Source: Macrostomum hystrix (lineage: Eukaryota; Animalia; Platyhelminthes). Taken from it: a stretch of 64,000 nucleotides of DNA. A program made the translations under genes and the position numbers. A model generated the notes under the pieces. That model saw only the letters and a program-made list of their open reading frames with translations. It did not search any database and was not told where the DNA came from. Shown piece after piece: positions 39,368-55,623 of the stretch (its first letter is position 1; the number at the start of each line of letters is the position of its first letter). The stretch lies in the NCBI GenBank assembly GCA_950097015.1, contig CATNEN010000037.1, positions 3,038,001-3,102,000 on the forward strand. Direction: 5' to 3'.

Positions 39368-42300
39368 CTAGTTGTGAGCAGTCACCGTTCCCGGAGCAGT
39401 TGTCGACCCCCACAGACGCAGCTCAGCTCGAATCAGGTCCTCCAGGCGGATTCTAGTCTGACTTGGTGACTCAGCCGAGCTTGACGGTGCCCTCGCCAGA
39501 GCCAGCAGTCGGTAGAGAGCCGTGCGACGTTGCAGCTTGAGGCGTTCCAGCCTCTCCAGCGACATCAGCACCCGGTCGATGCCGTTGAGCGCGCCGCTGA
39601 CTCGTACCTCGAGTCGGTCGACCCGTCGCGTCAGAAAAGCCAAATCGTCACGCGAGACTCCGCCAATGGATCGGCGAGATCGTCCAGGGGGCGGCGGCGA
39701 AGCTCCTTCTTCGTCGTATTCGCCATCATATTCGTCTTCCGATTCTTCTTCATGCGGCGCAAGAGTCTTCGATACCGTCCCGCCTGCTTCGGCCGCGATC
39801 TCCTGGTCCAGTTTGGACTGCGGAAGTGAGTCGATTTGTCTGCCTTATCTTGTGACAGGATAGATAGATAGAAACTACAACAAAACTGCTCAACCTGTGT
39901 CACAGCCGCACCTATTGCTTGGTGTGTCCAAAAGCTGCGTACATCCGCATTTCAACCAAAGTTATTGTTTGGTATCCTATTTAATGTAATATTTATGTCT
40001 TGAAAAGGGGTAAGAATTTTCATGTATTTGGCTGAGATAAGAACTCCCGACCTCACAGTCAAAAAGTTCAAAGCTTTAGCCACTGGCCACAGCTCCATTA
40101 TCAAAGTAGTTTAATAATAACATCATCTAGGATCATTCTCGTTGCCACCACTACTGTTTTAACGAGTAAAAATCACAGTTAATCTCTTGGCAGTGTCGCC
40201 GCCTCCTCACCCTCTCTCCCTCCAAGTCGCACCGCATCTGCATTCGCTCAGCGACGCTGAGCGCCTGATCTCCGTCGGCGTCGTATTTGGCAAAGAGAGC
40301 CTCAATCTCCGCGTCTGCGAAGCCGTGCCTGCGGAGTACGCGATAGGAGGCGTCTTCACATTAACACGCTGACTGATAGACGAGGCTGGTGGCTCAGGGG
40401 GGGTAGTTTTGCTAGTCTCATATACTAATATCCTGTGGTGGGAACAGTATCGCTAAAACTTTATTCCGTTTTGGACAAACTTAAAAAATAAATTTTGCAT
40501 GCAACGTATTTTTGGTGATCAACTGGTAAACTACAAAGTAAGTAAGAATTTATTACCAAGCTTCGATTTACTAACATGTGAGAAGCACTTTAATAACGAA
40601 GGTAGTAGAAAGAAAACGTAGGGTTTTTCAAATACACACATTTTTCTGTATCTGTATCTCCCACAATATTCAACCATAAAAATCCAGATCATAGGCTAAA
40701 ATTTTACGCTATATCACCTATATCTAAGACGTAGTTTTTCTGTTCACAAAATTTCATTTTGTACCATTTCGGCTATAGTATTGATTATTATGCTAATTAT
40801 TCTATAATTTAACCAATATGAATTCGCCATGAGTTTTTTACAGAGCGATGTTAGTTGTCCTTGTCACCCGGGTCTTCGACGAGAATCGCTGAATATTTTG
40901 ACGATGCTGACGTCGGATGTCTAAGAAAGTTAGTTCATCGCTAATGGTAGCAAAATGTATCCATATGATGGACTTTGACGAAAATCTGCCGAATTGTTTT
41001 CAGAGCTATCGTGAAGTATAGGTATGGGTAATTGAAATTCCCCAGATGTTCTTTCACATAGGGCAAAAATTGCGTGTTGTTTCTACTGTTAATGAAAATA
41101 TTGCTACAAATTTTTTAACGATTAAGCGTAAAATTTATTTCGACAAAATCGTAAAATATTTTCGAAATAGCAGTTATCAGTAAATTAACCAAATAAAAAA
41201 GCGATTTCCTCTAGTCCACATACTGCTTAAACTCATCATTAACTTACGGCCTTAGCTGCTTGCGCCAGCCCTCAAAACTCAATGTTGCCTCGTCACCGCA
41301 ATGTAGAACGGCCCGCTGAATGTCCAGCACCTTCTGGCGCCTCGCTGACAGCTTGTTCAACAGCTTGTCGGCTCTCTGAAAATTTTCATCAGAGGAAACT
41401 TTCTTTCTTTGAAAATTTAGAGAGGGTCCATTGTAGGAAGCTTTACTTTTCCCATAGAATTGTTGTATATTATCCCTTCACTTTGGCCACAAAAATGCGT
41501 CTGAAGTTCACTAAACTACGCTAGACCAGATACTCTGCAGGTCTGACCCCAGGTTAATTTCATTTAATTTTTGCCACTAAGGCCATTTCCGCGCATCTAC
41601 CCACCCTGCGTAGAAATCTGGCTACATCGATGCCAGTACGCCCGCCGCCGTATTCATTTTCAGCTTTCACTTCTCCGAATTTCTCATTAATGATGGCCAG
41701 AAACATGTTTAATAAGATGAAGAACACAAAGAACACGTAGAGCAGAAAGTACACCGGCCCTATCACTCTGTTAGCCTGTTGCATCTTGTCGAAGTTCACG
41801 TCGCCCAGAATGATGCGAAACAGTGTGAACACGGACTGTTGAAAGTCTTGAAAGTCGTCGACCTGGGTGCCAAACACCAGATTGCCCAGCAGAGCAAAGG
41901 CGAAGAAGATAATGAAGAAGATGATGCAGAAGGCCAGTAGGTCCTTGGCGCACGAGCCTAGGGTGGCGTTCAGCATGGTCAACGTACGACTGAAGCGGAC
42001 ATACTTGAACAGCTTGATCCAAGCCAGGAATACGGCGATGGCGATGGCGTGGTTGAAGCAGGTCTGCCAGTAAGACAGCGAGACGAAGTTGGGACATTCC
42101 AGCGCGTCAGAAAGTAACTGTTGGAGCTTCTCGGATATCGCCACAATGCGATAAATATTGAAGCCGGCGCAAACATAGCAGACGATTAACAGTGCCAAAT
42201 CCAGCCAGTTGCTCAGCACCTTCAGGTAGGCCAGTCTCTGACGCCTGATCTCCATGACCTCCTGCACAGTGTAATAGCAGCACAAAGCGAGCAGGCAGCA

Positions 42301-45107
42301 CTCGCATGCCGCTATGAAATAGTCAAACGGTTCGGCGTAGCGGAGCAGCTTCAGGGACCGGAACTCCCACGATGTGACCACGCCACCTAGGGAAACCAGG
42401 AGGTTACAGAACAGTGCGGCAGACTCTACTCAACACTGACTCTCCTCCTCACTGACTCTATTCCTCACTGACTCTATTCCACACTGACTCTATTCCACAC
42501 TGACTCTACTCAACACTGACTCTCCTCCTCACTGACTCTATTCCACACTGACTCTATTCCACACTGACTCTACTCAACACTGACTCTACTCCTCACTGAC
42601 TCTATTCCACACTGACTCTATTCCACACTGACTCTACTCAACACTGGTTCTGCTCCACACTGACTATATTCCACACTGATTCTATTCCACACTGACTCTA
42701 CCTATGCGAGTAAATAGCATTACCTGTTGCTGGTATCTCGGCGATCAATCGCGCAACACAGAACAGATTCACATTGGGATTGTAGACGGTGAAGTCGATA
42801 AACACCGCCCTGGTGCCTCGGTCTAGCCAGAGTCCGTGGTACAGACTGCTCAAGATCTGCTCAGAGGCAGACCGATTTGGCTGCAGCAGCACTCGATAGC
42901 CTCCACCATCGTAGGTGCCCACCGAGCCGGAATAGCTCGTGCTGCCTATGCGGTTCCAACGAAAATTTCGCTTATACGCTCGCATTTCTACTAAAAGTAG
43001 GCTGATCCAACATTTCTATGCCCTTTCCAGCTCACCATCGAGACTGTCTGAGCTCTGATAAGTCCACGCCCTGCCGCTGCCGAAGGCGTTCTTGTCCTCG
43101 GCCCAAGATGAGTAGGGCCCGTAGCACCAGCCGATGACGTCGCGAAACGGTTGAGCAACTCTGCAGCTGCGGTTGCTGACTCGAACCTGGCGAATCTGAG
43201 CTACGCCAAGCAGGACACTTTCGTAGTAGATTGTGGGCTTCGGCTCCCATGCGCTGGAGTTCACTGATGCTGAACTGCTGCTGTTGCTGATGCCAAACAC
43301 ACCATCCAGCAGTGTACTGTTGGCGAACTGATGGTGACAAACCTGCTAGCTTGATTATGATCATTACATCTGCAGCCAGCGAGGAGGCAATTCTGCCCAT
43401 TTCGCTGACTCCTGAGCACACACGCTCACACAAGTGTGTACATCTACCCTGACTTTCTCATCGTCAGGCTGTGAACACTCTCACTGTGCCTTTAAGGTTG
43501 GCCTTCAAGGGCGTAAATTGCACGACAAGCCACCAAGCCTTCTCTCCGCGGCTGCGCCCCAAATGAATGTGGCCTCGCCGCGGAATCGAGCTCAGGGACC
43601 TTGGCGCGAGAGGAAAACTCGCTATACCGCTCTGCCACTCACCCTCCCTCGACGGGAGATAGAAAATTTGTACTTTTTTTCATACAAACTAGTGATCTTT
43701 TTTTCTTGGAAGCAGATCCAAAGCTCTTCTTTTGATACAACGCATACCTAGCATGTCTCTCATTTCTCCCACCTCCAATAAGAAACAGTTTCTGAATTTG
43801 TGCAGAATAAAGTGAAGATTTCCTATATTCGTAGTGTATTTATCGGCAAAAACGAGGTTCCTAAACTTTTCGAAGAAACGTTATTTCCTGACCTTCTATT
43901 CCTAGTGTTCATTGGCACACAGTTACACAGGAATTGTGCACATATTCCCTGGGTAAGAAATTCTTAAAAGTCTATCACTGCTCCTTAACATCGAATTTAA
44001 GGGTAGAATCGTCAAAAAACTCACAGTCCACCAGTCCTTGATGGAGTTCATACTAGCAAAGGTTGTAGTGTCATTGCCGATTGGTACGTTTAAAAATATG
44101 CCACTGATTGTCTGCGTATAATTGTACATGCTGATGCTGCGCGTGCCGAAGGCCACTAAAAATTAGGTGGTGTTGCAAAAAAATCGCCCACTTCTCTCCC
44201 TGATCCTCTCCTTCTCTCCCTGACCCTCTCCTTCTCTCCCTGACCCTCTCCTTCTCTCCTTACCCTCTCCTCCACTCCGCTGACCCTCTCCTTCTCTCCC
44301 TGACACTCTCCGTCTCTCCCTGACCCTCTCCGTCTCTCCTCCTTCTCTCCCTGACCCTCTCCTTCTCTCCCTGACCCTCTCCTTTTCTCCCTGACCCTCT
44401 CTTTCTCTCCCTGACCCTCTGCGTTTCTCCCTGACCCTCTCCTTTTCTCCCTGACCCTCTCCTTTTCTCCCTGACCCTCTGCGTTTCTCCCTGACCCTCT
44501 CCTTTTCTCCCTGACCCTCTCCTTTTCTCCCTGACCCTCTCCTTTTCTCCCTGACCCTCTCCTTCTCTCCCTGACCCTCTGCGTTTCTCCCTGACCCTCT
44601 GCGTTTCTCCCTGACCCTCTCCTTTTCTCCCTGACCCTCTCCTTTTCTCCCTGACCCTCTCCTTTTCTCCCTGACCCTCTCCTTCTCTCCCTGACCCTCT
44701 CCTCCTCTCCCCTGACCCTCTCTTCCTCTCCCTGAACCTCTCCTCCTCTCCCCTGACCCTTTACTAGTCCTCCCTGACCTGAATTCTCTATCTGCCCTCT
44801 CCTGTCCTGTCCTGTCCGACCTTCGAATTTATCATCGGCAAATTATCTCACCGACAGTCAGCAACGCCAAGAAGCAGCAGTAGATGGCCAGCTCTCTCAG
44901 CGTAGCCTTCACGCTGCTGTCTTCATCCAGATTGGCTGCAGAATTTTCCAATTCTTTGTCGGTCTTAGCAACCGCCTGGCAGCACCATCCAACGCAGCGT
45001 TTATCGCCGTCCTCTTTCGGCACCGCATCAGCCGGGGCTTCCACACTTTGCACCGCTTGAGCTGTCACTTCAGCGTTTCTTATCGCGCACTGACTCTCTG
45101 AACTCAT
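39368..45107 (-). CDS. PKD2: Polycystin-2 (TRPP) channel, about 797 aa
   Basis: Exons 45107-44852, 44155-44025, 43342-43036, 42945-42724, 42386-41605, 41375-41248, 40328-40211, 39817-39368, all phases consistent. Motifs LGVAQIRQVRV, LWLDRGTRAVFIDFTVYNPNVNLFC, pore LGDVNF, FFILLNMFLAIIN, EF-hand EIEALFAKYDADGDQ, coiled coil LTRRVDRLE. Confidence 0.95.
39900..40097 (-). mobile_element. Degenerate SINE family B copy in last PKD2 intron
   Basis: cacagccgcacctattgc..gctgcgtaca matches 34025-34068; decayed tRNA-like head at about 40040-40097. Confidence 0.65.
42430..42700. repeat. Intronic 16/19-bp tandem (ctgactctattccaca)
   Basis: Direct periodicity. Confidence 0.92.
43371..43650 (-). mobile_element. 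SINE family A copy lacking its 3' tail, in PKD2 intron 2
   Basis: Shared head and body with the other copies. Confidence 0.87.
44190..44760. repeat. Intronic 20-bp tandem (ctctccctgaccctctcctt)
   Basis: Fills PKD2 intron 1. Confidence 0.95.
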
Positions 45108-46660: not shown

Positions 46661-49600
46661 TCATTGCGAACTGCCTTCGCCGATAAGTTTCAGCAGGCCA
46701 TCAAGATAGACGCCCCCAGCGAAGCCGCGAAGGCAGCTTGCCAACTCGTCACCGTGGGCGGCACTGAAGGCCGTCTTGATCTGGACCATGTCCACTTCGC
46801 AGCGGCCGATGATGACGCGAAGGACAACGCGGTCATCGCGGTCTGAAAAAAGCAGTTAAAAAGTTTCAAAAAAAAATATCCTTAACTTGCTATGTGTCCA
46901 AATTAAAAATGTATTGCTCCATTTCCGAACCTTTCCCTTCCTGAAGGTTTCCCTTGCTGAAGGTTTCCCTTCCTGAAGGTTTCCCTTCCAGAAGGTTTCC
47001 TATCCTGAAGGTTTCCCTTCCTGAAGGTTTCCCTTCCTGAAGGTTTCCAATCCTGAAGGTTTCCAATCCTGAAGGTTTCCAATCCTGAAGGTTTCCCTTC
47101 CTGAAGGTTTCCTATCCTGAAGGTTTCCCTTCCTGAAGGTTTCCCTTCCTGAAGGTTTCCCATTCCTGAAGGTTTCCTATCCTGAAGGTTTCCCTTCCTG
47201 AAGGTTTCCCTTCCTGAAGGTTTTCCATTCTGAAGGTTCCCCATCCTGAAGGTTTCCAATCCTGAAGGTTTCCAATCCTGAAGGTTTCCCATCCTGAAGT
47301 TTTCCTATCCTAACTGCCCTAGCCATCACAGCTCACAGGTGCCGTGAACCGCCTTGTTGAGCAGGCTCGCAAAGTAGGCCGGCCGATTGCAGAGACACCT
47401 GAGCAGTGTGAGCAGTCGTTTTCTACTCGCCCCAGCCGGCACCCGGAGCTTCACCAGCGCCTCCAGATTGGCCACCCCGCTGCCGCCTCCTTGGCTGTCG
47501 TCGCCGCACAGCAACCGCTGGCACTCGGCTAACGCAGCCCGCAGGTGGGCATTGCTCCGCTCCGCTAGAAGCTCCGTCAGGCGCCCACCAGCTGGCCAGC
47601 CGACCGGGCCTTCGTCAGCCAGTGCGCGGCCGTCGCGTCGCGCCTGTTCGCTGTCGTAGACGGCGCCCTCAGGACGGCTGCGGCCCGCGAGACCGTTTAA
47701 CAGCGAGCGGAACGGGCCACCAATGCCTTCCAGGGCGTCTTCGGTGAAGCTGCGACCGTACACTGCGATAGAAGTTTGAAAATTTGGAATTTAGCAGCTG
47801 TTAACAAACTCGGATATTGGATTAAACACAATGATAAAAAAATGGTATCAAGCAGTTTTCACGAAACAACTTCGGGCCATTCGCAACATGACTTGGTGCT
47901 CGTAGTCAATGGGAAAGCGCCTAACATTTCTCAAGGTCGTTCTATAACATGCAAACAACTGATGAACGTGGTGAAAATTGACCTTGAATCTAATTGGCTG
48001 TGAGGTCGGTCACGTGATTTGTTTGAGGGTGACGAATAAAACGGTCACTATACGCTTAAGACCGAGATGATGCAGACACTGTGGTCGACCAGCTGATGAA
48101 ATTTTAACGCTCGACAAAGGCAAAGCTGTACTAAGCTGCATTGCTGATAGTCCAGTAAGGGTGTACAGTAAATCTTTCTTGGCCAATCAAATGCAAGTTT
48201 CTCTCACTCTGCTGATAGGCCATCTTCGCAGCTTCAATTTTCGACTGAGTCCTTGAGCACAGCAGCTCAATCAAGCTGGTCTCGTCAGCCTGCGGCGAAT
48301 CCAAAGCCAGCCTGAGCTGGCAGGCGTCAAACTCGGCTGGCCCTAGGCAGAGCAGGCCGCACAGTCGGTCAAAATCGGAGCCGACTTCAGAGGCGCCGGG
48401 CGGCGAGAATTTCGCTGACAATCGCTGGCCATCCGGGTCGATTGTGGCGAAGGCGGCAGAGATGGCCGCTCTCTGCCAGGATGAGCGGCTGGTCAGTAGG
48501 TCCACCACAGTCTGCTCGTCTGGAGGCGACTCTGGGAAATGGATTTGAAGTGACATTAGAGTTCAGAGAGGAGAGGAGAGGAGAGGAGAGGAGAGGAGAG
48601 GAGAGGAGAGGAGAGGAGAGGAGAGGAGAGGAGAGGAGAGGAGAGGAGAGGAGAGGAGAGGAGAGGAGAGGAGAGGAGAGGAGAGGAGAGGAGAGGAGAG
48701 GAGAGGAGAGGAGAGGAGAGGAGAGGAGAGGAGAGGAGAGGAGAGGAGAGGAGAGGAGAGGAGAGGAGAGGAGAGGAGAGGAGAGGAGAGGAGAGAGTTG
48801 AGAAGACGAAAGGAGAGTAAGAATGAGAAAATGGAAATCTCACCAATGAGGGCTCGTTGAATGACCGCGGCGTCATCGGCAGACTTAAAGTCCACAGCCG
48901 GTGCCAGTGTGCCCATCTGTTCCCGTTTGGCTTCTTCAACCATGCCGAGGAGCTGCTCGGTGCGTTCCCACATTGTGGTAGGCGGCTGGTTCGAATCTTC
49001 CATCATTGCGCGCACAGACGACATTATATCCAGCGAGTCCTGCGGAGCAACGGACGGGTGGATTGTATTAGGCGAGAACTACAGGTGGTCTAACTCTAGA
49101 GCCCGAAGCAATTAGAAGGAACTGGGTGTGTAGGAAGAACTATAGGATGGGTAGAGAGCGAGCTGGCTGCAGATAAGAGAGGCCTAGCTGGGTAGGGAGT
49201 GAGGTGGCTGCTGATAAGACAGGCCAAGCTGGGTTGGGAGTGAGGTGGCTGCTGATAAGAGAGGCCTAGCTGGGTAGGGAGTGAGGTGGCTGCTGATAAG
49301 AGAGGCCTGGATGGGTAGGAAGTGAGGTGACTGTATAAAAGAGAGGCCTGGATGGGCATTGGATGGATTGAGTTAGTAAGAGAGGCCTGGATGGGCAGGG
49401 GAGTGGGATCACTGTTTAACATACTTTAGATAGTGTAGCGAATTATTCAGTAAAATCCCATATTTTACGAGCCAATATGGTATACGAGCTAGCAACGTAC
49501 AGGCCCAGCGAGTGACATAAATCGGCCCCTGGAGGCAGTCATAAAGCTGTCATCCTCTGGCACAGCCGACTCCTCTGTCTTTACCGCGATGCGCACAACT

Positions 49601-50536
49601 TTTGACTCTCGACGCTGCTCTGTTGATGGAGCAGGCGGCGATTGCGGCTTTGGCGGCAGTGTCGCTACTGGCTCCGTCTTCTGGCGCGGTCGTTGCATTT
49701 TTATTGACAAAGTGTACGCATCCGGCGACTGGTTTAGCTCTGCCGATGTGATCTTCAAATTCACGAGTATTATCTTATGCAAAACTTTGATTTAAATTTT
49801 CTACCCCATTCAGCCAATCAGATAAAAACCTGCCCGCCATCCCATATTAAAAACTCCAATCCTTCCCCCATTAGCCAATTAGATCACCCCATCAACTCCT
49901 CGCTCTCTTCCTCGCTCAGCCAATCAGATATATTCATGCCCCACCACCCCATTAAAATCGTCGACCCTAATTCTTGTATTAGTTGTCAGCTTACCGACTG
50001 CGGCTGCAGGCGAGCGCTTTTTAGTTGCTGCGCGAACTCACTGTCACCGCTGTTGCGACCGTACTGCAGTAGGCCGGCGTACACTCGCTGAAGCTGTGAT
50101 TTTAATTCGTCATCGCTGCCAGCTGATGTTGCTGACTTGACAACTGGAGTTGGCGGATGTAGCGGCGCAGGCGGCTGCGGAGGCTGCAGTTATTTTATAA
50201 TGGAAACGATCAAGAACTCGTAAGTCTACGAGTATACTTAGTGCTCAAACATACAGCAATCCTAATATTACCTGGGCGACTTTCTCAACCGCAAGAGCTG
50301 GGGGCTCAGCTTCGCCGTCCTTCATCGGTCGAAGCTTCCACTTGCCACCGCCGAACAGGTTAATCTGTGTGCCACCACAGCAGCATCTGGCGGCGGGGGC
50401 GACGGAGGCGGCCGCTGGTTTTGGCGAGTGCTTAGAAGACTCTACGGACGACGATGGCGATGGCGGAGCTTCCAGCAGTTTTTCCTCGCGACGAGTACAG
50501 GCCTCTGCCATTGTCTGATCGTCATCACTCTCTGAC

Positions 50537-50574
<38 letters not shown>

Positions 50575-52187
50575 AGTTACGCTACTCAAGCTAGAGCTGC
50601 TCAGCAGGTCGGATTGTGGCGCCCCGGCTTCAGTCGAGGCCGTGTCGTATCGCCAAGGTCGACAGTGGAATTCCGCCACCTTCAATGTGATGAAATTGCT
50701 GGGTTAAAAATACACAGGATATTCAGAAATCAAATGAGCTTTCTTCTTGGGGATTTTTTTTCCAACACACCTCCGTGGCGCTGCAGTTTAGTCCGTCGCA
50801 GTGGCGCCTTCTTCGACAGCCGCCAACTACAGCAACGGCCTGCACAGTCCGTTTGCCAGGGTTCAGGCAGAATGGCCCCTCATAGAGGAATGTCACCTCG
50901 CGACGACTGCGTCCGTCCGTGTCCCAGCGATGCACCGGGTCAGGCTCCGTGCCATCGGTGGTGAAGTAGATCTCAAGCGGCTCGTCTGGGCCAACGGCTG
51001 CACTGCAGTCGCGACGGTGACAGGTGCAGCCGCAGCCTCTGAGAGCCTGGTGTTGCTGGCAGCGGGAGTCTGGCATCGGGCGTGTTGAATTGGGGTGGGT
51101 CGTGATAGCGTCTACTTCGCATCAGAGCCGATTAGACAGGGTCTAGTTTATCAGAGCCAATGAGACATGGTCTAGTTTATCAGAGCCGATGAGACATGGT
51201 CTAGTTTATCAGAGCCAATGAGACAGGGTCTGGTTTATCAGAACCAATGAGACAGGGTCTGGTTTATCAAAGCCAATGAGACAGGGTCTATTTTATCAGA
51301 GCCAATGAGACAGGGTCTGGTTTATCAGAGCCAATGAGACAGGGTCTAGTTTATCAGAGCCAATGAGACAGGGTCTGGTTCATCAGAGCCAATGAGACAG
51401 GGTCTGGTTTATCAGCTAGCCAATGAGACAGGGTCTAGTTTATCAGAGCCAATGAGACAGGGTCTGGTTTATCAGAGCCAATGAGACAGGGTCTAGTTTA
51501 TCAGAGCCAATGAGACAGGGTCTGGTTCATCAGAGCCAATGAGACAGGGTCTGGTTTATCAGCTAGCCAATGAGACAGGGTCTAGTTTATCAGAGCCAAT
51601 GAGACAGGGTCTGGTTTATCAGAGCCAATCAGACAGGGTCTGGTTTATCAGAGCCAATGAGACAGGGTCTAGTTTATCAGAGCCAATGAGACAGGGTCTA
51701 GTTTATCAGAGCCAATCAGACAGGGTCTGGTTTATCAGAGCCAATGAGACAGGTTTTGGTTTATCAGAGCCAATCAGACGGGGTCTGGTTTATCAGAGCC
51801 AATCAGACAGGGTCTGGTTTATCAGAGCCAATCAGACGGGGTCTGGTTTATCAGAGCCAATGAGACAGGGTCTGGTTTATCAGAGCCAATGAGACAGGGT
51901 CTGGTTTATCAGAGCCAATCAGACAGGGTCTGGTTTATCAGAGCCAATCAGACGGGGTCTGGTTTATCAGAGCCAATGAGACAGGGTCCAGTTTATCAGA
52001 ACCAATCAGAACTATCAGATTTCTTGAAACTGCTCATCTCACCAGCCAATCCGATGATCTCAATCCTGGTTGCCGTGTCCACCCGCCAAGCGCGCCGTCG
52101 CCTATCAAATCGGCACCTGTCGCCTGGAATTGGCCGGATCAGTGGCGGTTCGGGGGGCATCGCGGGTGCCGCCACCGCTGCCGACAT
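46661..52187 (-). CDS. Putative DZANK1-like/annexin chimeric protein, about 780 aa
   Basis: Exons 52187-52043, 50997-(50808 or 50771), (50698 or 50679)-50272, 50183-49995, 49773-49501, 49039-48844, 48531-48208, 47762-47337, 46842-46661. N-terminal EIYFTTDGTEP...TFLYEGPFCLNPGKRTVQAVAV (CHB_HEX_C/Fn3-associated type). The last four exons encode four annexin repeats (VVDLLTSRSSWQRAAI, DETSLIELLCSRT, LTELLAERSNAHLR, VLRVIIGRCEVDMVQIK). Confidence 0.7.
46925..47310. repeat. Intronic 16-bp tandem (cctgaaggtttccctt)
   Basis: Direct periodicity. Confidence 0.95.
48565..48795. repeat. (GAGAG)n microsatellite in intron
   Basis: Perfect 5-bp periodicity. Confidence 0.98.
49135..49400. repeat. Imperfect about 41-bp tandem in the intron joining the DZANK1-like and annexin parts
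   Basis: agagaggcctagctgggtagggagtgaggtggctgctgata copies. Confidence 0.85.
51125..52012. repeat. Intronic 29-bp tandem (tttatcagagccaatgagacagggtctgg)
   Basis: Fills most of intron 1 of the chimeric gene. Confidence 0.96.
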
Positions 52188-52772: not shown

Positions 52773-54033
52773 CTAGTACTCAGACTCTTCCTCGGGCTCC
52801 ACCGTGCCCTTCATCACCCTGTCTGTGATGGCCGTCAGGTCCAGAATGAACTGCTGCACGCGAGCCAGCTGTTCCGACGTCACCTCTTGAATGTCGCCTT
52901 CGGGATCAATCTCCTCGCCTTGGTCGCGGTAGCGGGACACCAGCTGGCACAGGTTGTACGTGGCCACCCGCACCATGCCGATTTGCAGGGTCCGGTCGGC
53001 CACCGAGTTCTTCACCTGAGTCCATTCAGCCTCGCGTTGCAGTGCTCGACTAGCGGCTTCGTCCAGACGCTCTCTTAGGCCGCTAAGGACATTGTTTTGC
53101 GCCAGCACCTCGTTGGCTTTGGACTCCTTGTAGCGCGACTGGTCCGTCTTGTGACCTTCGACGCTCTCTTGGTTGCCGTCCTCCCGACGCTTGAGCTCCT
53201 GGAGGGTTGAAAGTTTGAAGACTCAGGGTTTAACTCATACGTCCCCAAGTCAAGCTGCAATATGAAGGTTTGGAACAGCCTCATCCTACCTTCTTGGTGG
53301 AGCTCAGTGTCTCATAGCGATCCATGACTTCTCGAACCTCCGTGAATTCGTTTGACTCTTCGATGACCTTCTCCAGAAACTTCTGATAGCGTTCGTATCT
53401 ATCGGAGAGACCCTTGAGTCGTTCGCGCAGTTTGGAGTAGATCCGCATTTCCTCTCCGATCTCCACAATTTCCTGCTCTTTCTGACGCCGGTATGCGCGC
53501 TCGTCGCTGGCCTTCTTTACCGCGCGAACTCGCTTCGCGTCCGTCTCCTTCAGGAAGCGGTCGAACTTCAGCAGACTCTCCTTCAGCTGGTGCTCCTTCT
53601 TCTCGAGTTCTTCGCGTCGCTGTTGCAGGGACTCCATTTTCATTTGGAACTCCTCCTTCTGAGCCTGTGGACCCGAGTGGGACGAAAATTTAACTTTAAC
53701 TTCGATCCTAATCCACGTCATTTATTCTTATTACTGACCATAAAAAGTAAATAAATTAACAGATACACCAGCTGATGCTTACACTCAGTGCCGTCTCCAC
53801 CTCCATCATTTCCCGTTTCTTCTCAAGAAGCCTAGTGGCGGATGTCAGATGGTCATCCTCTCGCTCTGGCATCTTTCTGAATGTCAAATAAACGCGATTC
53901 ACTTAATAAAACTCATGACTTCCCTTTCTGAAATATCGAAAAACAATGCGTGCGGCTTTAAGGTAGCGTCAACTTACACAAGAAGCTTATCCTCAAACGT
54001 CGTCCGAAAGTACTCTTCCATGCTAACATCCAT
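52773..54033 (-). CDS. CFAP73: CFAP73/CCDC42-family (DUF4200) ciliary coiled-coil protein, about 316 aa
   Basis: Exons 54033-53978, 53876-53783, 53664-53290, 53198-52773, phases consistent. MEEYFRTTFEDKLL, DHLTSATRLLEKKRE, QKEEFQMKMESLQQRREEL, LKESLLKFDRFLKE match the family; the CFAP73 versus CCDC42 choice is from recall. Confidence 0.8.
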
Positions 54034-55623
54034 GGTGCTTCGGGCTGAAAATTTTGCGATTAAAAAATTCGTACAGTTCTTCGCCTAACTGTTTCGTATG
54101 ACTAATTCAAAGAAATTTACGATTTACAATAATAATGCAAGAAATTTTAACAGCAACCGAAGTCCTAAGATGATTTACAAATAAAAATTTATTAATTAAT
54201 AGAAAATGCATCGCTTGTGAATATATCAGAAGCCTATAATATGATCTTGAATAAATACAGATGATATAAATAATGGCTGCTTAAGATTAATTAATTGTTA
54301 TTAATGCAAAGCAAGTTCAAATTAGTTTAATTCATGAGACATTTTAAAAGACATCACTTTATTTCGCTAACGAAAATGTAGGTATAAAACGTTATGCTTT
54401 TTGCGTCAATGTGATCACACTTATAAAAAAGTATTTTCGAACACTTCAATTAGCTATTATGTACTCAAGCCTTAAGGCGAGAATCAGAACAGTAAAAATA
54501 TTCCCGACTAGTTTAGCTTGGAGCTGATGACAAGAAATACAAATTAAACATTAATTAATACTGAGATAGAAAAGAACGAATTTAATTTAGGCCCAGAAAG
54601 TAAAGAACTTGTTCTGTAATATTACTTGTATGGATTCGAATATATGAGTAAAAGTAAGAATACTAACAGAGAGACTTTATGTTTCTTCGTAAATGTAGTC
54701 TAAAAAAGAGGATTTTGAAACCAAGTCAAATCGATGTAATTTACATGAGAGAAGCTAATTAGTATTAAAATAAGTAAAAAAGCACATAATATTTCAGTAG
54801 ACCAATACAATAATATTTTTAGTCTTATCTAGATAACCTAATAGAAATAACTATATAATGTTGTGCTTTTATTTGTTTTACTTTGTCATTCCAAGAACAA
54901 AAAGAACCGTGATTCCGTGAATCTGTCAAGACAACAATTTCTTGCATACAAACAATAGTGTGTTGGTAATTATTTTTTGCTGCTTGTCTCTATTGGGAGC
55001 ATAGTATTGATATGAATTTCCTTCGCAGAGCTCAACTTTGCACATTTCAGCTGTTTTCCAGGTAAGCGCCAACGTTTTTATCACAACTTTTACTTAACTG
55101 TCAATTGTGAATTTCTGCAAATACAGACAATGTCAATGTTTTGGTTTTGCTGTCATTTTTTTCTACTGTTCTGTGTGCTATGGCTGTGGACCCTGTAGAT
55201 TCTTTTGTTCGTGTTGCAATTACGATTGTATTTCTTATATGTTTCTGTTTTTGGTTTGCATATTTTTTCTATTTTATCTAGAGTAGATTTTTGCTGGATT
55301 TAGCTAGGTTTATTGCTACTTGGCAAAATTATAAGTTAATTAAAGAGCTATGACTAAGAGCTATTGGCCTATGCTTTACAGCTTTATTGTTTGCCATGGC
55401 TATCAACATATTTGGTGCATAAGGACTATTATGTTTGTGATGCCTCATGTTAGGTTTCATGAGCAACAAGAAAATGTATAGAATATTTCTAAAATATATT
55501 TATCATATCAGTATCATTTGAAGCCACTAGCCTAGCTTGCCTATCTAGTCTTGGAAGCCAAAAGTCACAACATAAAATAACTCATTGCTGAAGTATAAAA
55601 TTAAAGTATATCTTTGCAATATA

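What the first reader, a model, noticed from the sequence alone, without database searches (positions are those of the whole stretch)
46661..52187. Apparent DZANK1-like/annexin chimera: ciliary scaffold domains joined to a four-repeat annexin core
Seen: nine minus-strand exons splice into one reading frame, with a phase-0 intron (49500-49040, gtacgt...ctccgcag) linking the two halves. From recall of human DZANK1: the N-terminus (PPLIRPI...RVDTATRIEI; EIYFTTDGTEP; TFLYEGPF.L.PGKRTVQAVAV) and a middle block (QLQRVYAGLLQYGRN..SEF...KITSAEL) resemble its N-terminal CHB_HEX_C-type domain and its pre-ankyrin segment. Here there are no zinc-ribbon CxxC pairs and no ankyrin repeats; an Ser/Asp-rich linker and a complete annexin core take their place. 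Inference: domain swapping may have produced a membrane-binding DZANK1 derivative. I do not know of this architecture.
Basis: partly seen in the sequence, partly recalled or inferred. Interest (0 to 1): 0.85.

Follow-up and report, generated by a model that had tools for sequence, protein, structure and literature searches.

The report
DZANK1-head annexin gene, calcium sites lost
This is a real, expressed flatworm gene that joins the front part of the ciliary protein DZANK1 to an annexin membrane-binding core; the combination is not a new chimera but an old, widespread and unstudied invertebrate gene family, and this copy has lost all four annexin calcium-binding loops.

Summary
Nine minus-strand GT-AG exons (52187-46661) join into one 782-aa frame, or 806 aa with an upstream exon-2 acceptor. 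Intron-less contigs from four public runs of one study join exons 3-4-5-6 and run into exon 7. They remove exactly 49500-49040, so the two halves are one mRNA.

The N half carries three DZANK1 parts: an Fn3_assoc/CHB_HEX_C beta-sandwich, a conserved G-T-Q-I motif and the pre-ankyrin block. It has no zinc ribbons and no ankyrin repeats. The C half is a four-repeat annexin core.

The claim of novelty fails. The same head-plus-annexin layout occurs in Macrostomum lignano (syntenic ortholog, 59% identical), parasitic flatworms, molluscs, annelids, nemerteans, a brachiopod and Priapulus. Echinoderms and hemichordates have it with ankyrin repeats kept. RefSeq calls these proteins "annexin A6-like" or "DZANK1-like". 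Head domains of fused proteins separate from true DZANK1 in a tree (98/93), which fits one old duplication and fusion.

The distinctive point is that this gene and its M. lignano ortholog are a fast-evolving paralog. It has lost all four K-G-x-G-T calcium loops yet stays under purifying selection.

No paper I found describes the family. The scan noted the same chimera elsewhere in this genome.

The parts
52043..52187 (-). Exon 1. ATG at 52187-52185; start of the DZANK1-type head (P-P-L-I-R-P-I at 52148-52122). A second in-frame ATG lies at codon 10.
   Evidence: 83% identical to M. lignano locus L001 3049-3156
50771..51069 (-). Exon 2: Fn3_assoc / CHB_HEX_C_1 beta-sandwich core (LEIYFTTDG 50977-50951; GKRTVQAVAV 50857-50828). 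Acceptor 51069 adds a Cys/His-rich 24-aa insert and is favoured by cross-species conservation.
   Evidence: Pfam; DZANK1 profile; PDB 11xu_G1; acceptor comparison
50272..50679 (-). Exon 3: Ser/Asp-rich low-complexity linker, including (GCT)12 at 50539-50574, and the conserved G-G-T-Q-I-N-L-F motif at 50376-50353. This is a TQT-type putative LC8/DYNLL site.
   Evidence: 3' part and its donor confirmed by RNA contigs
49995..50183 (-). Exon 4: first half of the DZANK1 pre-ankyrin middle block (SAGSDDELKSQLQRVYAGLLQYGRN, 50126-50052).
   Evidence: family middle-block profile 33 bits; both junctions in RNA contigs
49501..49752 (-). Exon 5: second half of the middle block (ITSAELNQSPDAYTLSIKMQ, 49752-49693), then a Pro-rich linker. 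The phase-0 donor is followed in the intron by V-R-C-stop (stop at 49491-49489).
   Evidence: junctions in RNA contigs
49040..49500 (-). Intron 5 (461 nt, GT..AG), holding a 41-bp x 5.1 tandem repeat at 49148-49356. It is removed in the transcripts of all four runs.
48844..49039 (-). Exon 6: linker into the annexin core. It has an internal ATG at 49024, not conserved in M. lignano (V-V-S-P-V there), and the start of annexin repeat 1 (AVDFKSADDA, 48898-48869).
48208..48531 (-). Exon 7: annexin repeat 1 and the start of repeat 2. The AB loops read I-E-S-P-P-D-E (spanning 48856-48512 across intron 6) and L-D-S-P-Q-A-D-E (48310-48278) in place of K-G-x-G-T-D-E.
   Evidence: Pfam Annexin 4.5e-9; alignment; start read as the loose end of the RNA contigs
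47337..47762 (-). Exon 8: end of repeat 2, repeat 3 and the start of repeat 4. Repeat 3 has loop G-W-P-A-G-G-R (47613-47578) instead of K-W-G-T-D-E-S, plus an 11-aa Gly-rich insert.
   Evidence: alignment; 72.5% identical to the M. lignano exon
46661..46842 (-). Exon 9: annexin repeat 4 and the stop codon. The loop H-G-T-Y-R-D-D spans intron 8 (47352-46826), and G-F-A-G-G-V-Y (46726-46706) replaces D-D-T-S-G-D-Y.
   Evidence: Pfam Annexin 3e-4; alignment

Best explanation
The locus is one protein-coding gene of a Macrostomum-type flatworm. Its product is about 782-806 aa.

The layout, from N to C terminus, is as follows.
- A DZANK1-type head: an Fn3_assoc beta-sandwich, a disordered Ser/Asp-rich linker with a conserved G-T-Q-I motif, and a small folded helix-plus-hairpin block that precedes the ankyrin repeats in DZANK1.
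- A four-repeat annexin core.

It belongs to an old bilaterian family of DZANK1-head annexins. That family is a paralog of true DZANK1 that lacks the zinc ribbons and carries an annexin core at its C end. Within the family, this gene and its syntenic M. lignano ortholog are a fast-evolving duplicate of the canonical flatworm copy (M. lignano P0032 type). The duplicate has replaced all four K-G-x-G-T calcium loops.

Likely mechanism (inferred, not shown). DZANK1 is reported to bind the LC8/DYNLL dynein light chains, and a preprint assigns it to the outer surface of ciliary transition-zone doublet microtubules. The head would therefore place the protein, probably as an LC8-bridged dimer, at the ciliary base or on dynein-linked cargo. 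In canonical family members the annexin core would couple that site to acidic membranes in a calcium-dependent way. In this copy the core cannot use type II calcium sites, so it probably acts as a calcium-independent membrane or protein-binding scaffold.

Shown: the gene structure, the fused transcript, the homology of each part, the distribution of the family, the loss of the calcium loops and purifying selection. Inferred: LC8 binding, ciliary location and what the annexin core binds.
For: Fused transcript.
- Joints at all three laid introns in four runs, including 49500/49038.
- The runs' word share equals the exonic share.

Homology of the parts.
- Pfam hits for the head domain and the annexin repeats.
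- True-DZANK1 profile against the head, 3e-13.
- Middle-block profile, 33 bits.
- G-T-Q-[TIV] is present in all 18 fused proteins checked and in several true DZANK1 proteins.

The M. lignano ortholog.
- P0001 is 59% identical over the full length.
- Every window exon except exon 4 has a match in the same order at that locus.
- The neighbours are the same: DUF4200 gene upstream and polycystin channel downstream.
- It has no Met at the annexin start.

Selection. dN/dS is about 0.22 for the head half and 0.15 for the annexin half.

The family.
- Members were found across phyla.
- The head-domain tree splits fused from true DZANK1 at 98/93, and places this gene inside the protostome fused clade at 99/98 on a branch of 2.33.
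- In the annexin tree the pair is sister to M. lignano B at 83/81, on a branch of 1.98.

Calcium loops. They are lost in all four repeats here and in M. lignano A. They are kept in every other aligned repeat, apart from one G-A-D-E loop in Priapulus and the garbled C-terminus of the Schistosoma model.

Structure. An AlphaFold model of the Lingula head gives a confident beta-sandwich (residues 1-110), a disordered linker and a confident middle block at residues 300-360.

DZANK1 biology.
- DZANK1 binds NINL and associates with dynein subunits, and it co-localises with DYNLL1 at the ciliary base (PMC4617706).
- A DZANK1 dimer and an LC8 dimer are assigned to the transition-zone A-microtubule (bioRxiv 10.64898/2026.06.11.731632).
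- PDB 11xu holds a DZANK1 chain.
Against: - No data on the tissue or the subcellular site of this protein.
- LC8 binding rests on a three-residue anchor whose +1 position is Ile rather than Thr.
- The DZANK1 placement on the doublet in the preprint is itself a model-guided assignment.
- The middle block is largely missing from the annotated M. lignano ortholog, so it may be dispensable in this paralog.
- The RNA evidence is from assembled contigs of one study. Contigs cannot show transcript ends, strand or minor isoforms, so an additional annexin-only or head-only isoform is not excluded.
- Exons 1-3 and 7-9 were not checked with reads.
- dS is near saturation (1.2-1.6), so the dN/dS values are rough.
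Confidence: 0.8

Rival explanations
1. There are two adjacent genes. A head-only gene ends at the V-R-C stop (49489). A separate annexin gene starts at ATG 49024, perhaps trans-spliced at the 49039 acceptor. The joined form is then only a minor read-through product.
For: A stop lies four codons past the exon-5 donor, and an ATG lies 15 nt into exon 6. Older M. lignano models P0002 and P0005 start near the annexin half. Contigs drop rare variants and cannot show transcript ends.
Against: - In all four runs the only contig across this region is the spliced E5-E6 form, and no loose end (spliced leader) is seen at 49039.
- The M. lignano ortholog is annotated as one protein and has V-V-S-P-V where this gene has I-M-S-S-V, so the internal Met is not conserved.
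- The same head-plus-annexin layout is conserved in many phyla.
- P0002 and P0005 are clearly faulty models that run on into the neighbouring polycystin gene.
Confidence: 0.05
2. The gene is real, but it is a decaying duplicate. After duplication of the canonical head-annexin gene this copy lost calcium binding and is drifting towards loss of function. The head and the core then no longer work together.
For: - Very long branches in both trees (2.33 and 1.98).
- Amino-acid composition unlike the rest of the family.
- All four calcium loops lost.
- The middle block is eroded in M. lignano.
- Low-complexity expansions in exon 3.
Against: - The frame is open over nine exons in two species separated by dS above 1.
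- dN/dS is 0.15-0.22 in both halves.
- The replaced loops are themselves conserved between the two species: ESP(P/V)D, SPQADE, GW(P/A)AGGR and HGTY(R/H)DD.
- The gene is transcribed and correctly spliced.
Confidence: 0.1
3. The head is not DZANK1-derived. It is a generic Fn3_assoc/CHB_HEX_C beta-sandwich of the kind common in bacterial glycosidases, and it was joined to an annexin independently of DZANK1.
For: The protein atlas and the fold search return bacterial Fn3_assoc proteins as nearest neighbours of the domain alone. The direct pairwise match to solved DZANK1 is weak (E 0.11).
Against: - The family shares three separate collinear DZANK1 features: the head domain, the G-T-Q motif and the pre-ankyrin block.
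- Ambulacrarian members also keep the DZANK1 ankyrin repeats and match the DZANK1 profile at 1e-134 to 1e-147.
- The Lingula head matches solved DZANK1 at 3.4e-33.
Confidence: 0.03

Closest known systems
DZANK1-head annexins of other invertebrates. Examples: M. lignano PAA68959 (P0001) and PAA61558 (P0032), Schistosoma rodhaini CAH8579822, Lingula LOC106160214, molluscan 'annexin A6-like', Priapulus LOC106807208, and Asterias rubens 'DZANK1-like' (P0109).
   Same: The order of parts is the same: Fn3_assoc head, G-T-Q-[TIV] motif, middle block, annexin core. P0001 is the syntenic ortholog, with a counterpart for every exon except exon 4, and 59% identity.
   Different: - All others except P0001 keep the K-G-x-G-T-D-E calcium loops.
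- Molluscs, annelids and Priapulus have 8-11 annexin repeats, against four here.
- Echinoderms and hemichordates also keep the ankyrin repeats.
- This gene has a Cys/His-rich insert in the head and a poly-Ser linker.
[quoted passage not shown]
   Same: N-terminal Fn3_assoc beta-sandwich, TQT-type motif and pre-ankyrin middle block, in the same order.
   Different: No double zinc ribbon, no ankyrin repeats and an annexin core at the C end. The head domains fall on the other side of a 98/93 branch from true DZANK1, and both genes coexist in the same species (for example Priapulus, Acanthaster, Patiria and Glandiceps).
Classical annexins (A4, A5, A2, A6; for example PDB 2zhi, 1avh, 1m9i).
   Same: Four collinear ~70-residue annexin repeats. 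The ortholog's core matches annexin VI at 6e-67 and annexin A4 at 2e-35.
   Different: A structured DZANK1-type head of about 410-430 aa replaces the short variable N-terminus. All four type II calcium-site loops are replaced.
Annexins with degenerate calcium sites (vertebrate annexin A9 and A10; some parasite annexins lacking the endonexin motif, discussed in PMC3795353).
   Same: Loss of the K-G-x-G-T endonexin motif while the fold is retained.
   Different: Here the loss is complete in all four repeats and occurs in a protein with a ciliary-type head. The statement about A9 and A10 is from my own knowledge and was not tested here.

Membership tests
Annexin superfamily (PF00191) | Four tandem ~70-residue annexin repeats forming the core | tested here: met
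   Pfam Annexin on exon 7 (4.5e-9, two stretches) and exon 9 (3e-4). Collinear alignment over all four repeats with canonical annexins. The ortholog P0001 matches solved annexins at up to 6e-67.
Annexin superfamily (PF00191) | Type II calcium site: K-G-x-G-T in the AB loop plus an acidic residue about 38 positions downstream (typical, not obligatory) | tested here: not met
   The loops read IESPPDE, LDSPQADE, GWPAGGR and HGTYRDD. The downstream acidic positions are lost in repeats 3 and 4 (VPAGASR, GFAGGVY).
DZANK1 (true orthologs) | N-terminal Fn3_assoc/CHB_HEX_C_1 domain | tested here: met
   Pfam 4.4e-7 and 2e-6; DZANK1 profile 3e-13.
DZANK1 (true orthologs) | Double zinc ribbon (PF12773 / ZnF_RBZ) | tested here: not met
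   No hit at E<=1 on any exon. The DZANK1 profile positions of about 140-430 are unmatched in all fused proteins.
DZANK1 (true orthologs) | C-terminal ankyrin repeats | tested here: not met
   No Ank hit at E<=1. The DZANK1 profile beyond about position 610 is unmatched in protostome fused proteins.
DZANK1 (true orthologs) | Head domain groups with true DZANK1 in a tree | tested here: not met
   Fused and true DZANK1 are separated by one branch, 98/93.
DZANK1-head annexin family (database-visible, unnamed) | Fn3_assoc head, then G-T-Q-[TIV] motif, then pre-ankyrin middle block, then annexin core, on one polypeptide | tested here: met
   Head; motif at residues 227-230; middle block residues 276-375; core; one transcript.
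DZANK1-head annexin family (database-visible, unnamed) | Placement inside the clade of fused proteins | tested here: met
   In the head tree it lies inside the protostome fused clade, 99/98. In the annexin tree it is sister to M. lignano B, 83/81, which is weak.
LC8/DYNLL-binding proteins | Functional TQT-type anchor in a disordered segment that binds the LC8 dimer | not testable with these tools
   Only the motif (G-T-Q-I), its universal conservation in the family and its position in the low-confidence, unstructured linker of the model (pLDDT about 55-70 around the motif) were seen. Binding is inferred from the DZANK1 literature.

The most novel reading that the evidence does not exclude
DZANK1-head annexins would be a conserved but never studied bilaterian family. 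They would tie the ciliary base or transition-zone microtubules, or LC8/dynein-linked cargo, directly to membrane through an annexin core. They were lost in vertebrates, where only DZANK1 remains. The Macrostomum A paralog would be a calcium-independent derivative with a new binding role. Together with the CFAP97/Hemingway-annexin fusions seen in Nematostella, a sea slug and reportedly this genome, this would point to annexins as a recurrent membrane anchor for ciliary proteins.
Probability: 0.3. Interest if true: 0.7.

Novelty: new member of a known kind. Interest (0 to 1): 0.45.

Why it matters
For genome annotation, the result settles that the two halves are one gene. It also gives a corrected model, and it shows that older M. 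lignano models fusing the annexin half to the neighbouring polycystin gene are wrong.

For biology, the value lies less in this locus than in the family it exposes. A DZANK1-type ciliary head joined to an annexin core is conserved from priapulids and spiralians to echinoderms and hemichordates. It appears in databases only under misleading automatic names, and no paper I could find describes it.

DZANK1 has recently been assigned to the outside of transition-zone doublets together with LC8. These proteins are therefore candidates for a direct microtubule-to-membrane or dynein-cargo-to-membrane link. Macrostomum is a tractable model (RNAi, transgenesis). It carries both a canonical copy and a copy without calcium sites, which offers a natural comparison.

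Tried and rejected
- **Protein atlas.** Exon 2 returned only generic bacterial Fn3_assoc clusters. Exon 4 returned chance phage clusters with low recognition. Neither helped.
- **The window's own protein.** I looked for it in the protein collection to get a full-length reference. It is not there, so the spliced protein could be used only in scripts and as exon pieces in the other tools.
- **Solved structures.** Exon 4 alone gave nothing meaningful.
- **Fold search.** I ran the Lingula head model against solved structures to learn which DZANK1 parts are resolved on the doublet. The fold library ends in April 2026 and lacks entry 11xu, so only bacterial beta-sandwich modules came back.
- **Literature.** DZANK1 plus annexin, Fn3 associated plus annexin, and Mlig030870 gave no relevant paper. 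The invertebrate annexin survey PMC3795353 does not mention such a head.
- **Reads.** I deliberately did not lay reads on the whole gene, to stay clear of the long tandem arrays and the (GAGAG)n and (GCT)n runs. Exons 1-3 and 7-9 therefore remain unconfirmed by reads.
- **Two-gene or operon reading.** Considered and rejected (see rivals).

Full report
**1. What is in the sequence**

On the minus strand between 52187 and 46661, nine open segments can be joined through canonical GT donors and AG acceptors. They give one frame of 782 codons. The exons are:

| Exon | Coordinates |
|---|---|
| 1 | 52187-52043 |
| 2 | 50997-50771 |
| 3 | 50679-50272 |
| 4 | 50183-49995 |
| 5 | 49752-49501 |
| 6 | 49039-48844 |
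| 7 | 48531-48208 |
| 8 | 47762-47337 |
| 9 | 46842-46661 |

If it is not spliced, the frame stops after V-R-C at 49491-49489. Several introns are filled with tandem arrays.

**2. Is the junction between the halves real?**

Four public runs from one study and one organism hold 0.42-0.44 of the sampled 31-letter words of the 5527-base stretch. That is its exonic share, 2349/5527.

I laid their contigs on 48800-50530 only. This kept clear of the long tandem arrays and the simple-sequence runs.

- Every run has a contig of 1.3-2.0 kb that lies on exon 3, exon 4, exon 5 and exon 6.
- The contigs skip exactly 88, 242 and 461 bases.
- The ends of the skipped parts read CT..AC on the plus strand, that is GT..AG on the gene's strand.
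- Each contig runs on at 48844 into letters that are the start of exon 7.
- No contig shows a foreign 5' end at the exon-6 acceptor.

The contigs are intron-less, so they derive from RNA, although the runs' kind is not on record. The E5-E6 splice is therefore real. Contigs cannot show ends or rare isoforms, and all four runs are one study.

**3. The parts**

Pfam places Fn3_assoc (4.4e-7) and CHB_HEX_C_1 (2e-6) on exon 2, and Annexin on exon 7 (4.5e-9) and exon 9 (3e-4). Nothing else reaches E<=1, and there is no zinc ribbon and no ankyrin.

- **Head.** A profile I built from 26 true DZANK1 proteins hits residues 31-110 at 3e-13. The solved DZANK1 chain 11xu_G1 aligns with LEIYFTTDG...AVAV, but only at E 0.11 as a single pair.
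- **Middle block.** A profile of the corresponding block from other fused proteins does, matching residues 276-375 at 33 bits. That block in those proteins matches DZANK1 profile positions of about 480-580 at 1e-11 to 1e-21. The aligned stretch is ...SAGSDDELKSQLQRVYAGLLQYGRN..SEF.....ITSAELNQSPDAYTLSIKMQ, spanning exons 4 and 5.
- **G-T-Q motif.** It reads G-G-T-Q-I-N-L-F in exon 3 (50376-50353). It is present in all 18 fused proteins examined, and as G-T-Q-T-V-G-L-F-Y in starfish and vertebrate DZANK1.

**4. The architecture is old and common**

A search of 1.8 billion representatives with exon 7 gave Macrostomum lignano PAA68959 (P0001, 748 aa) as the best hit. It has the same layout.

Fn3_assoc plus annexin also occurs in many other animals:

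- a second M. lignano gene (P0032);
- Schistosoma, Echinostoma and Anoplocephala;
- Lingula, Owenia, Paralvinella, Lineus and Tubulanus;
- a chiton, many bivalves, gastropods and cephalopods, usually named 'annexin A6-like', about 1100 aa with eight repeats;
- Priapulus.

In all five echinoderm classes and in hemichordates the same protein also keeps the DZANK1 ankyrin repeats. RefSeq names those proteins 'DZANK1-like'. They coexist with a true DZANK1 that has zinc ribbons. Against the true-DZANK1 profile they match the head and everything from the middle block to the ankyrin repeats. They skip only the zinc-ribbon part.

A maximum-likelihood tree of the head domain puts all 18 fused proteins on one side of a branch and all 17 true DZANK1 on the other (98/93). 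The protostome fused proteins form a starred group (99/98) that includes this gene. The tree is unrooted and rests on 139 columns. It is compatible with a single ancient duplication and fusion but does not prove one.

I saw no vertebrate, arthropod, nematode or cnidarian member. The searches select candidates by shared words, so absence is not shown.

**5. What is special about this copy**

The window's protein is 59% identical to P0001 over its full length.

The M. lignano locus has a match for every window exon except exon 4, in the same order. It also has the same neighbours: a DUF4200 gene upstream, and a polycystin (PKD-type) channel gene downstream. The window is therefore the orthologous locus of a related macrostomid.

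Synonymous divergence is high (dS about 1.2-1.6). dN/dS is about 0.22 in the head half and 0.15 in the annexin half.

Both trees put the pair on a very long branch (2.33 and 1.98), nearest to the canonical M. lignano B copy. The support for that sister relation is weak (83/81).

In the alignment of annexin cores, nearly every other aligned repeat has K-G-x-G-T-(D/N)-E in repeats 1, 2 and 4 and G-T-D-E in repeat 3. The exceptions are one G-A-D-E loop in Priapulus and the garbled C-terminus of the Schistosoma model. This pair has I-E-S-P-P-D-E, L-D-S-P-Q-A-D-E, G-W-P-A-G-G-R and H-G-T-Y-R-D-D instead. The acidic partner positions of repeats 3 and 4 are also gone. The replacements are themselves conserved between the two species.

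The copy also has a poly-Ser/Asp linker. It probably has a Cys/His-rich 24-residue insert in the head as well. I count 13 identical residues of 24, eight of them through synonymous codon differences (my reading of the sequences). I therefore prefer acceptor 51069, which gives 806 aa.

The annotated M. lignano protein lacks most of the middle block.

**6. How it probably works**

DZANK1 binds NINL and associates with dynein subunits, and it co-localises with DYNLL1 at the ciliary base. Its loss disturbs vesicle transport to photoreceptor outer segments (PMC4617706).

A 2026 preprint assigns a DZANK1 dimer and an LC8 dimer to the outer face of the A-microtubule of transition-zone doublets. That assignment is model-guided. 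A solved entry, 11xu, contains a DZANK1 chain.

The fused family keeps the parts that lie outside the zinc ribbons. These are the head sandwich, a TQT-type anchor in a disordered linker, and a small folded block. In an AlphaFold model of the Lingula head, the sandwich (residues 1-110) and the block (residues 300-360, two helices and a hairpin) are confident, and the linker between them is not.

I infer that the head brings the protein to LC8 and to microtubule-associated sites at the ciliary base. In canonical members the annexin core would then bind acidic membrane when calcium rises. In this paralog that switch is gone, so the core would act without calcium, or bind something other than membrane.

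None of this was or could be tested here.

**7. Rivals**

- Two separate genes with rare read-through: about 0.05.
- A decaying duplicate: about 0.1.
- A head unrelated to DZANK1: about 0.03.

The evidence for and against each is given in the Rival explanations section.

**8. Novelty and verdict**

The scan has also noted the same chimera on another piece of this genome (s1-408141), and a CFAP97-annexin fusion (s1-291386).

I found no paper on the family. This locus is a new member of a kind that is visible in databases but uncharacterised. Its particular feature is the complete loss of the calcium loops. Interest is moderate.

Noticed in passing
window 51121-52010, 46932-47311, 48566-48795, 49148-49356: Four of the eight introns are largely made of tandem arrays: 29 bp x 30.6 in intron 1, 16 bp x 23.7 in intron 8, (GAGAG)46 in intron 6 and 41 bp x 5.1 in intron 5. 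One run has a 71-nt contig at depth 3 inside the intron-5 repeat. It could be pre-mRNA or another copy of the repeat.
   Followed up: partly
window about 41560-45107 (minus strand): The next gene downstream is a polycystin (PKD2-type) cation channel: PKD_channel 1.8e-63 and Polycystin_dom 4.8e-26. It is collinear with the M. lignano locus. Older M. lignano protein models P0002 and P0005 wrongly run the annexin half into this gene.
   Followed up: partly
window about 52773-54063 (minus strand): The upstream gene on the same strand matches the M. lignano gene annotated with DUF4200 (PF13863), with 80-100% identical exon translations. Its last exon alone gave no Pfam hit. It ends about 590 bp before the start codon of the fused gene. 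I have not tested whether a DUF4200 gene, the DZANK1-head annexin and a polycystin channel stand together for a functional reason.
   Followed up: partly
proteins P0018 (Nematostella vectensis, 1969 aa) and P0146 (Plakobranchus ocellatus, 949 aa): Annexin cores fused to a different ciliary head, Hemingway/CFAP97 (PF13879, about 1e-16). The scan's note s1-291386 reports such a fusion, without calcium sites, in this genome too. Other heads seen on annexin cores are NARG2_C in a goby model and a weak, sub-threshold zf-UBR match in a choanoflagellate.
   Followed up: partly
window 51069-50998 and 50376-50390: Cys-rich stretches peculiar to the Macrostomum A paralog: R-G-C-G-C-T-C-H-R-R-D-C inside the head domain, R-H-C-D-G-L-N-C after it, and C-C-C just before the G-T-Q-I motif. 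All are conserved in M. lignano. Whether they bind metal or are lipidated is unknown.
   Followed up: no
window 52213-52188: A good acceptor-like site (attttacag) lies 26 nt upstream of the first ATG. It could be a spliced-leader acceptor if this species trans-splices as M. lignano is known to do (my own knowledge).
   Followed up: no
proteins P0174 (Aplysia), P0181 (Biomphalaria), P0192 (Mytilus): Molluscan entries named DZANK1 have the head, middle block and ankyrin repeats but no zinc-ribbon hit, and are 600-655 aa. They match the true-DZANK1 profile at 1e-198 to 1e-227 with the ribbon part skipped. They may be isoforms or models lacking the ribbon exons.
   Followed up: no
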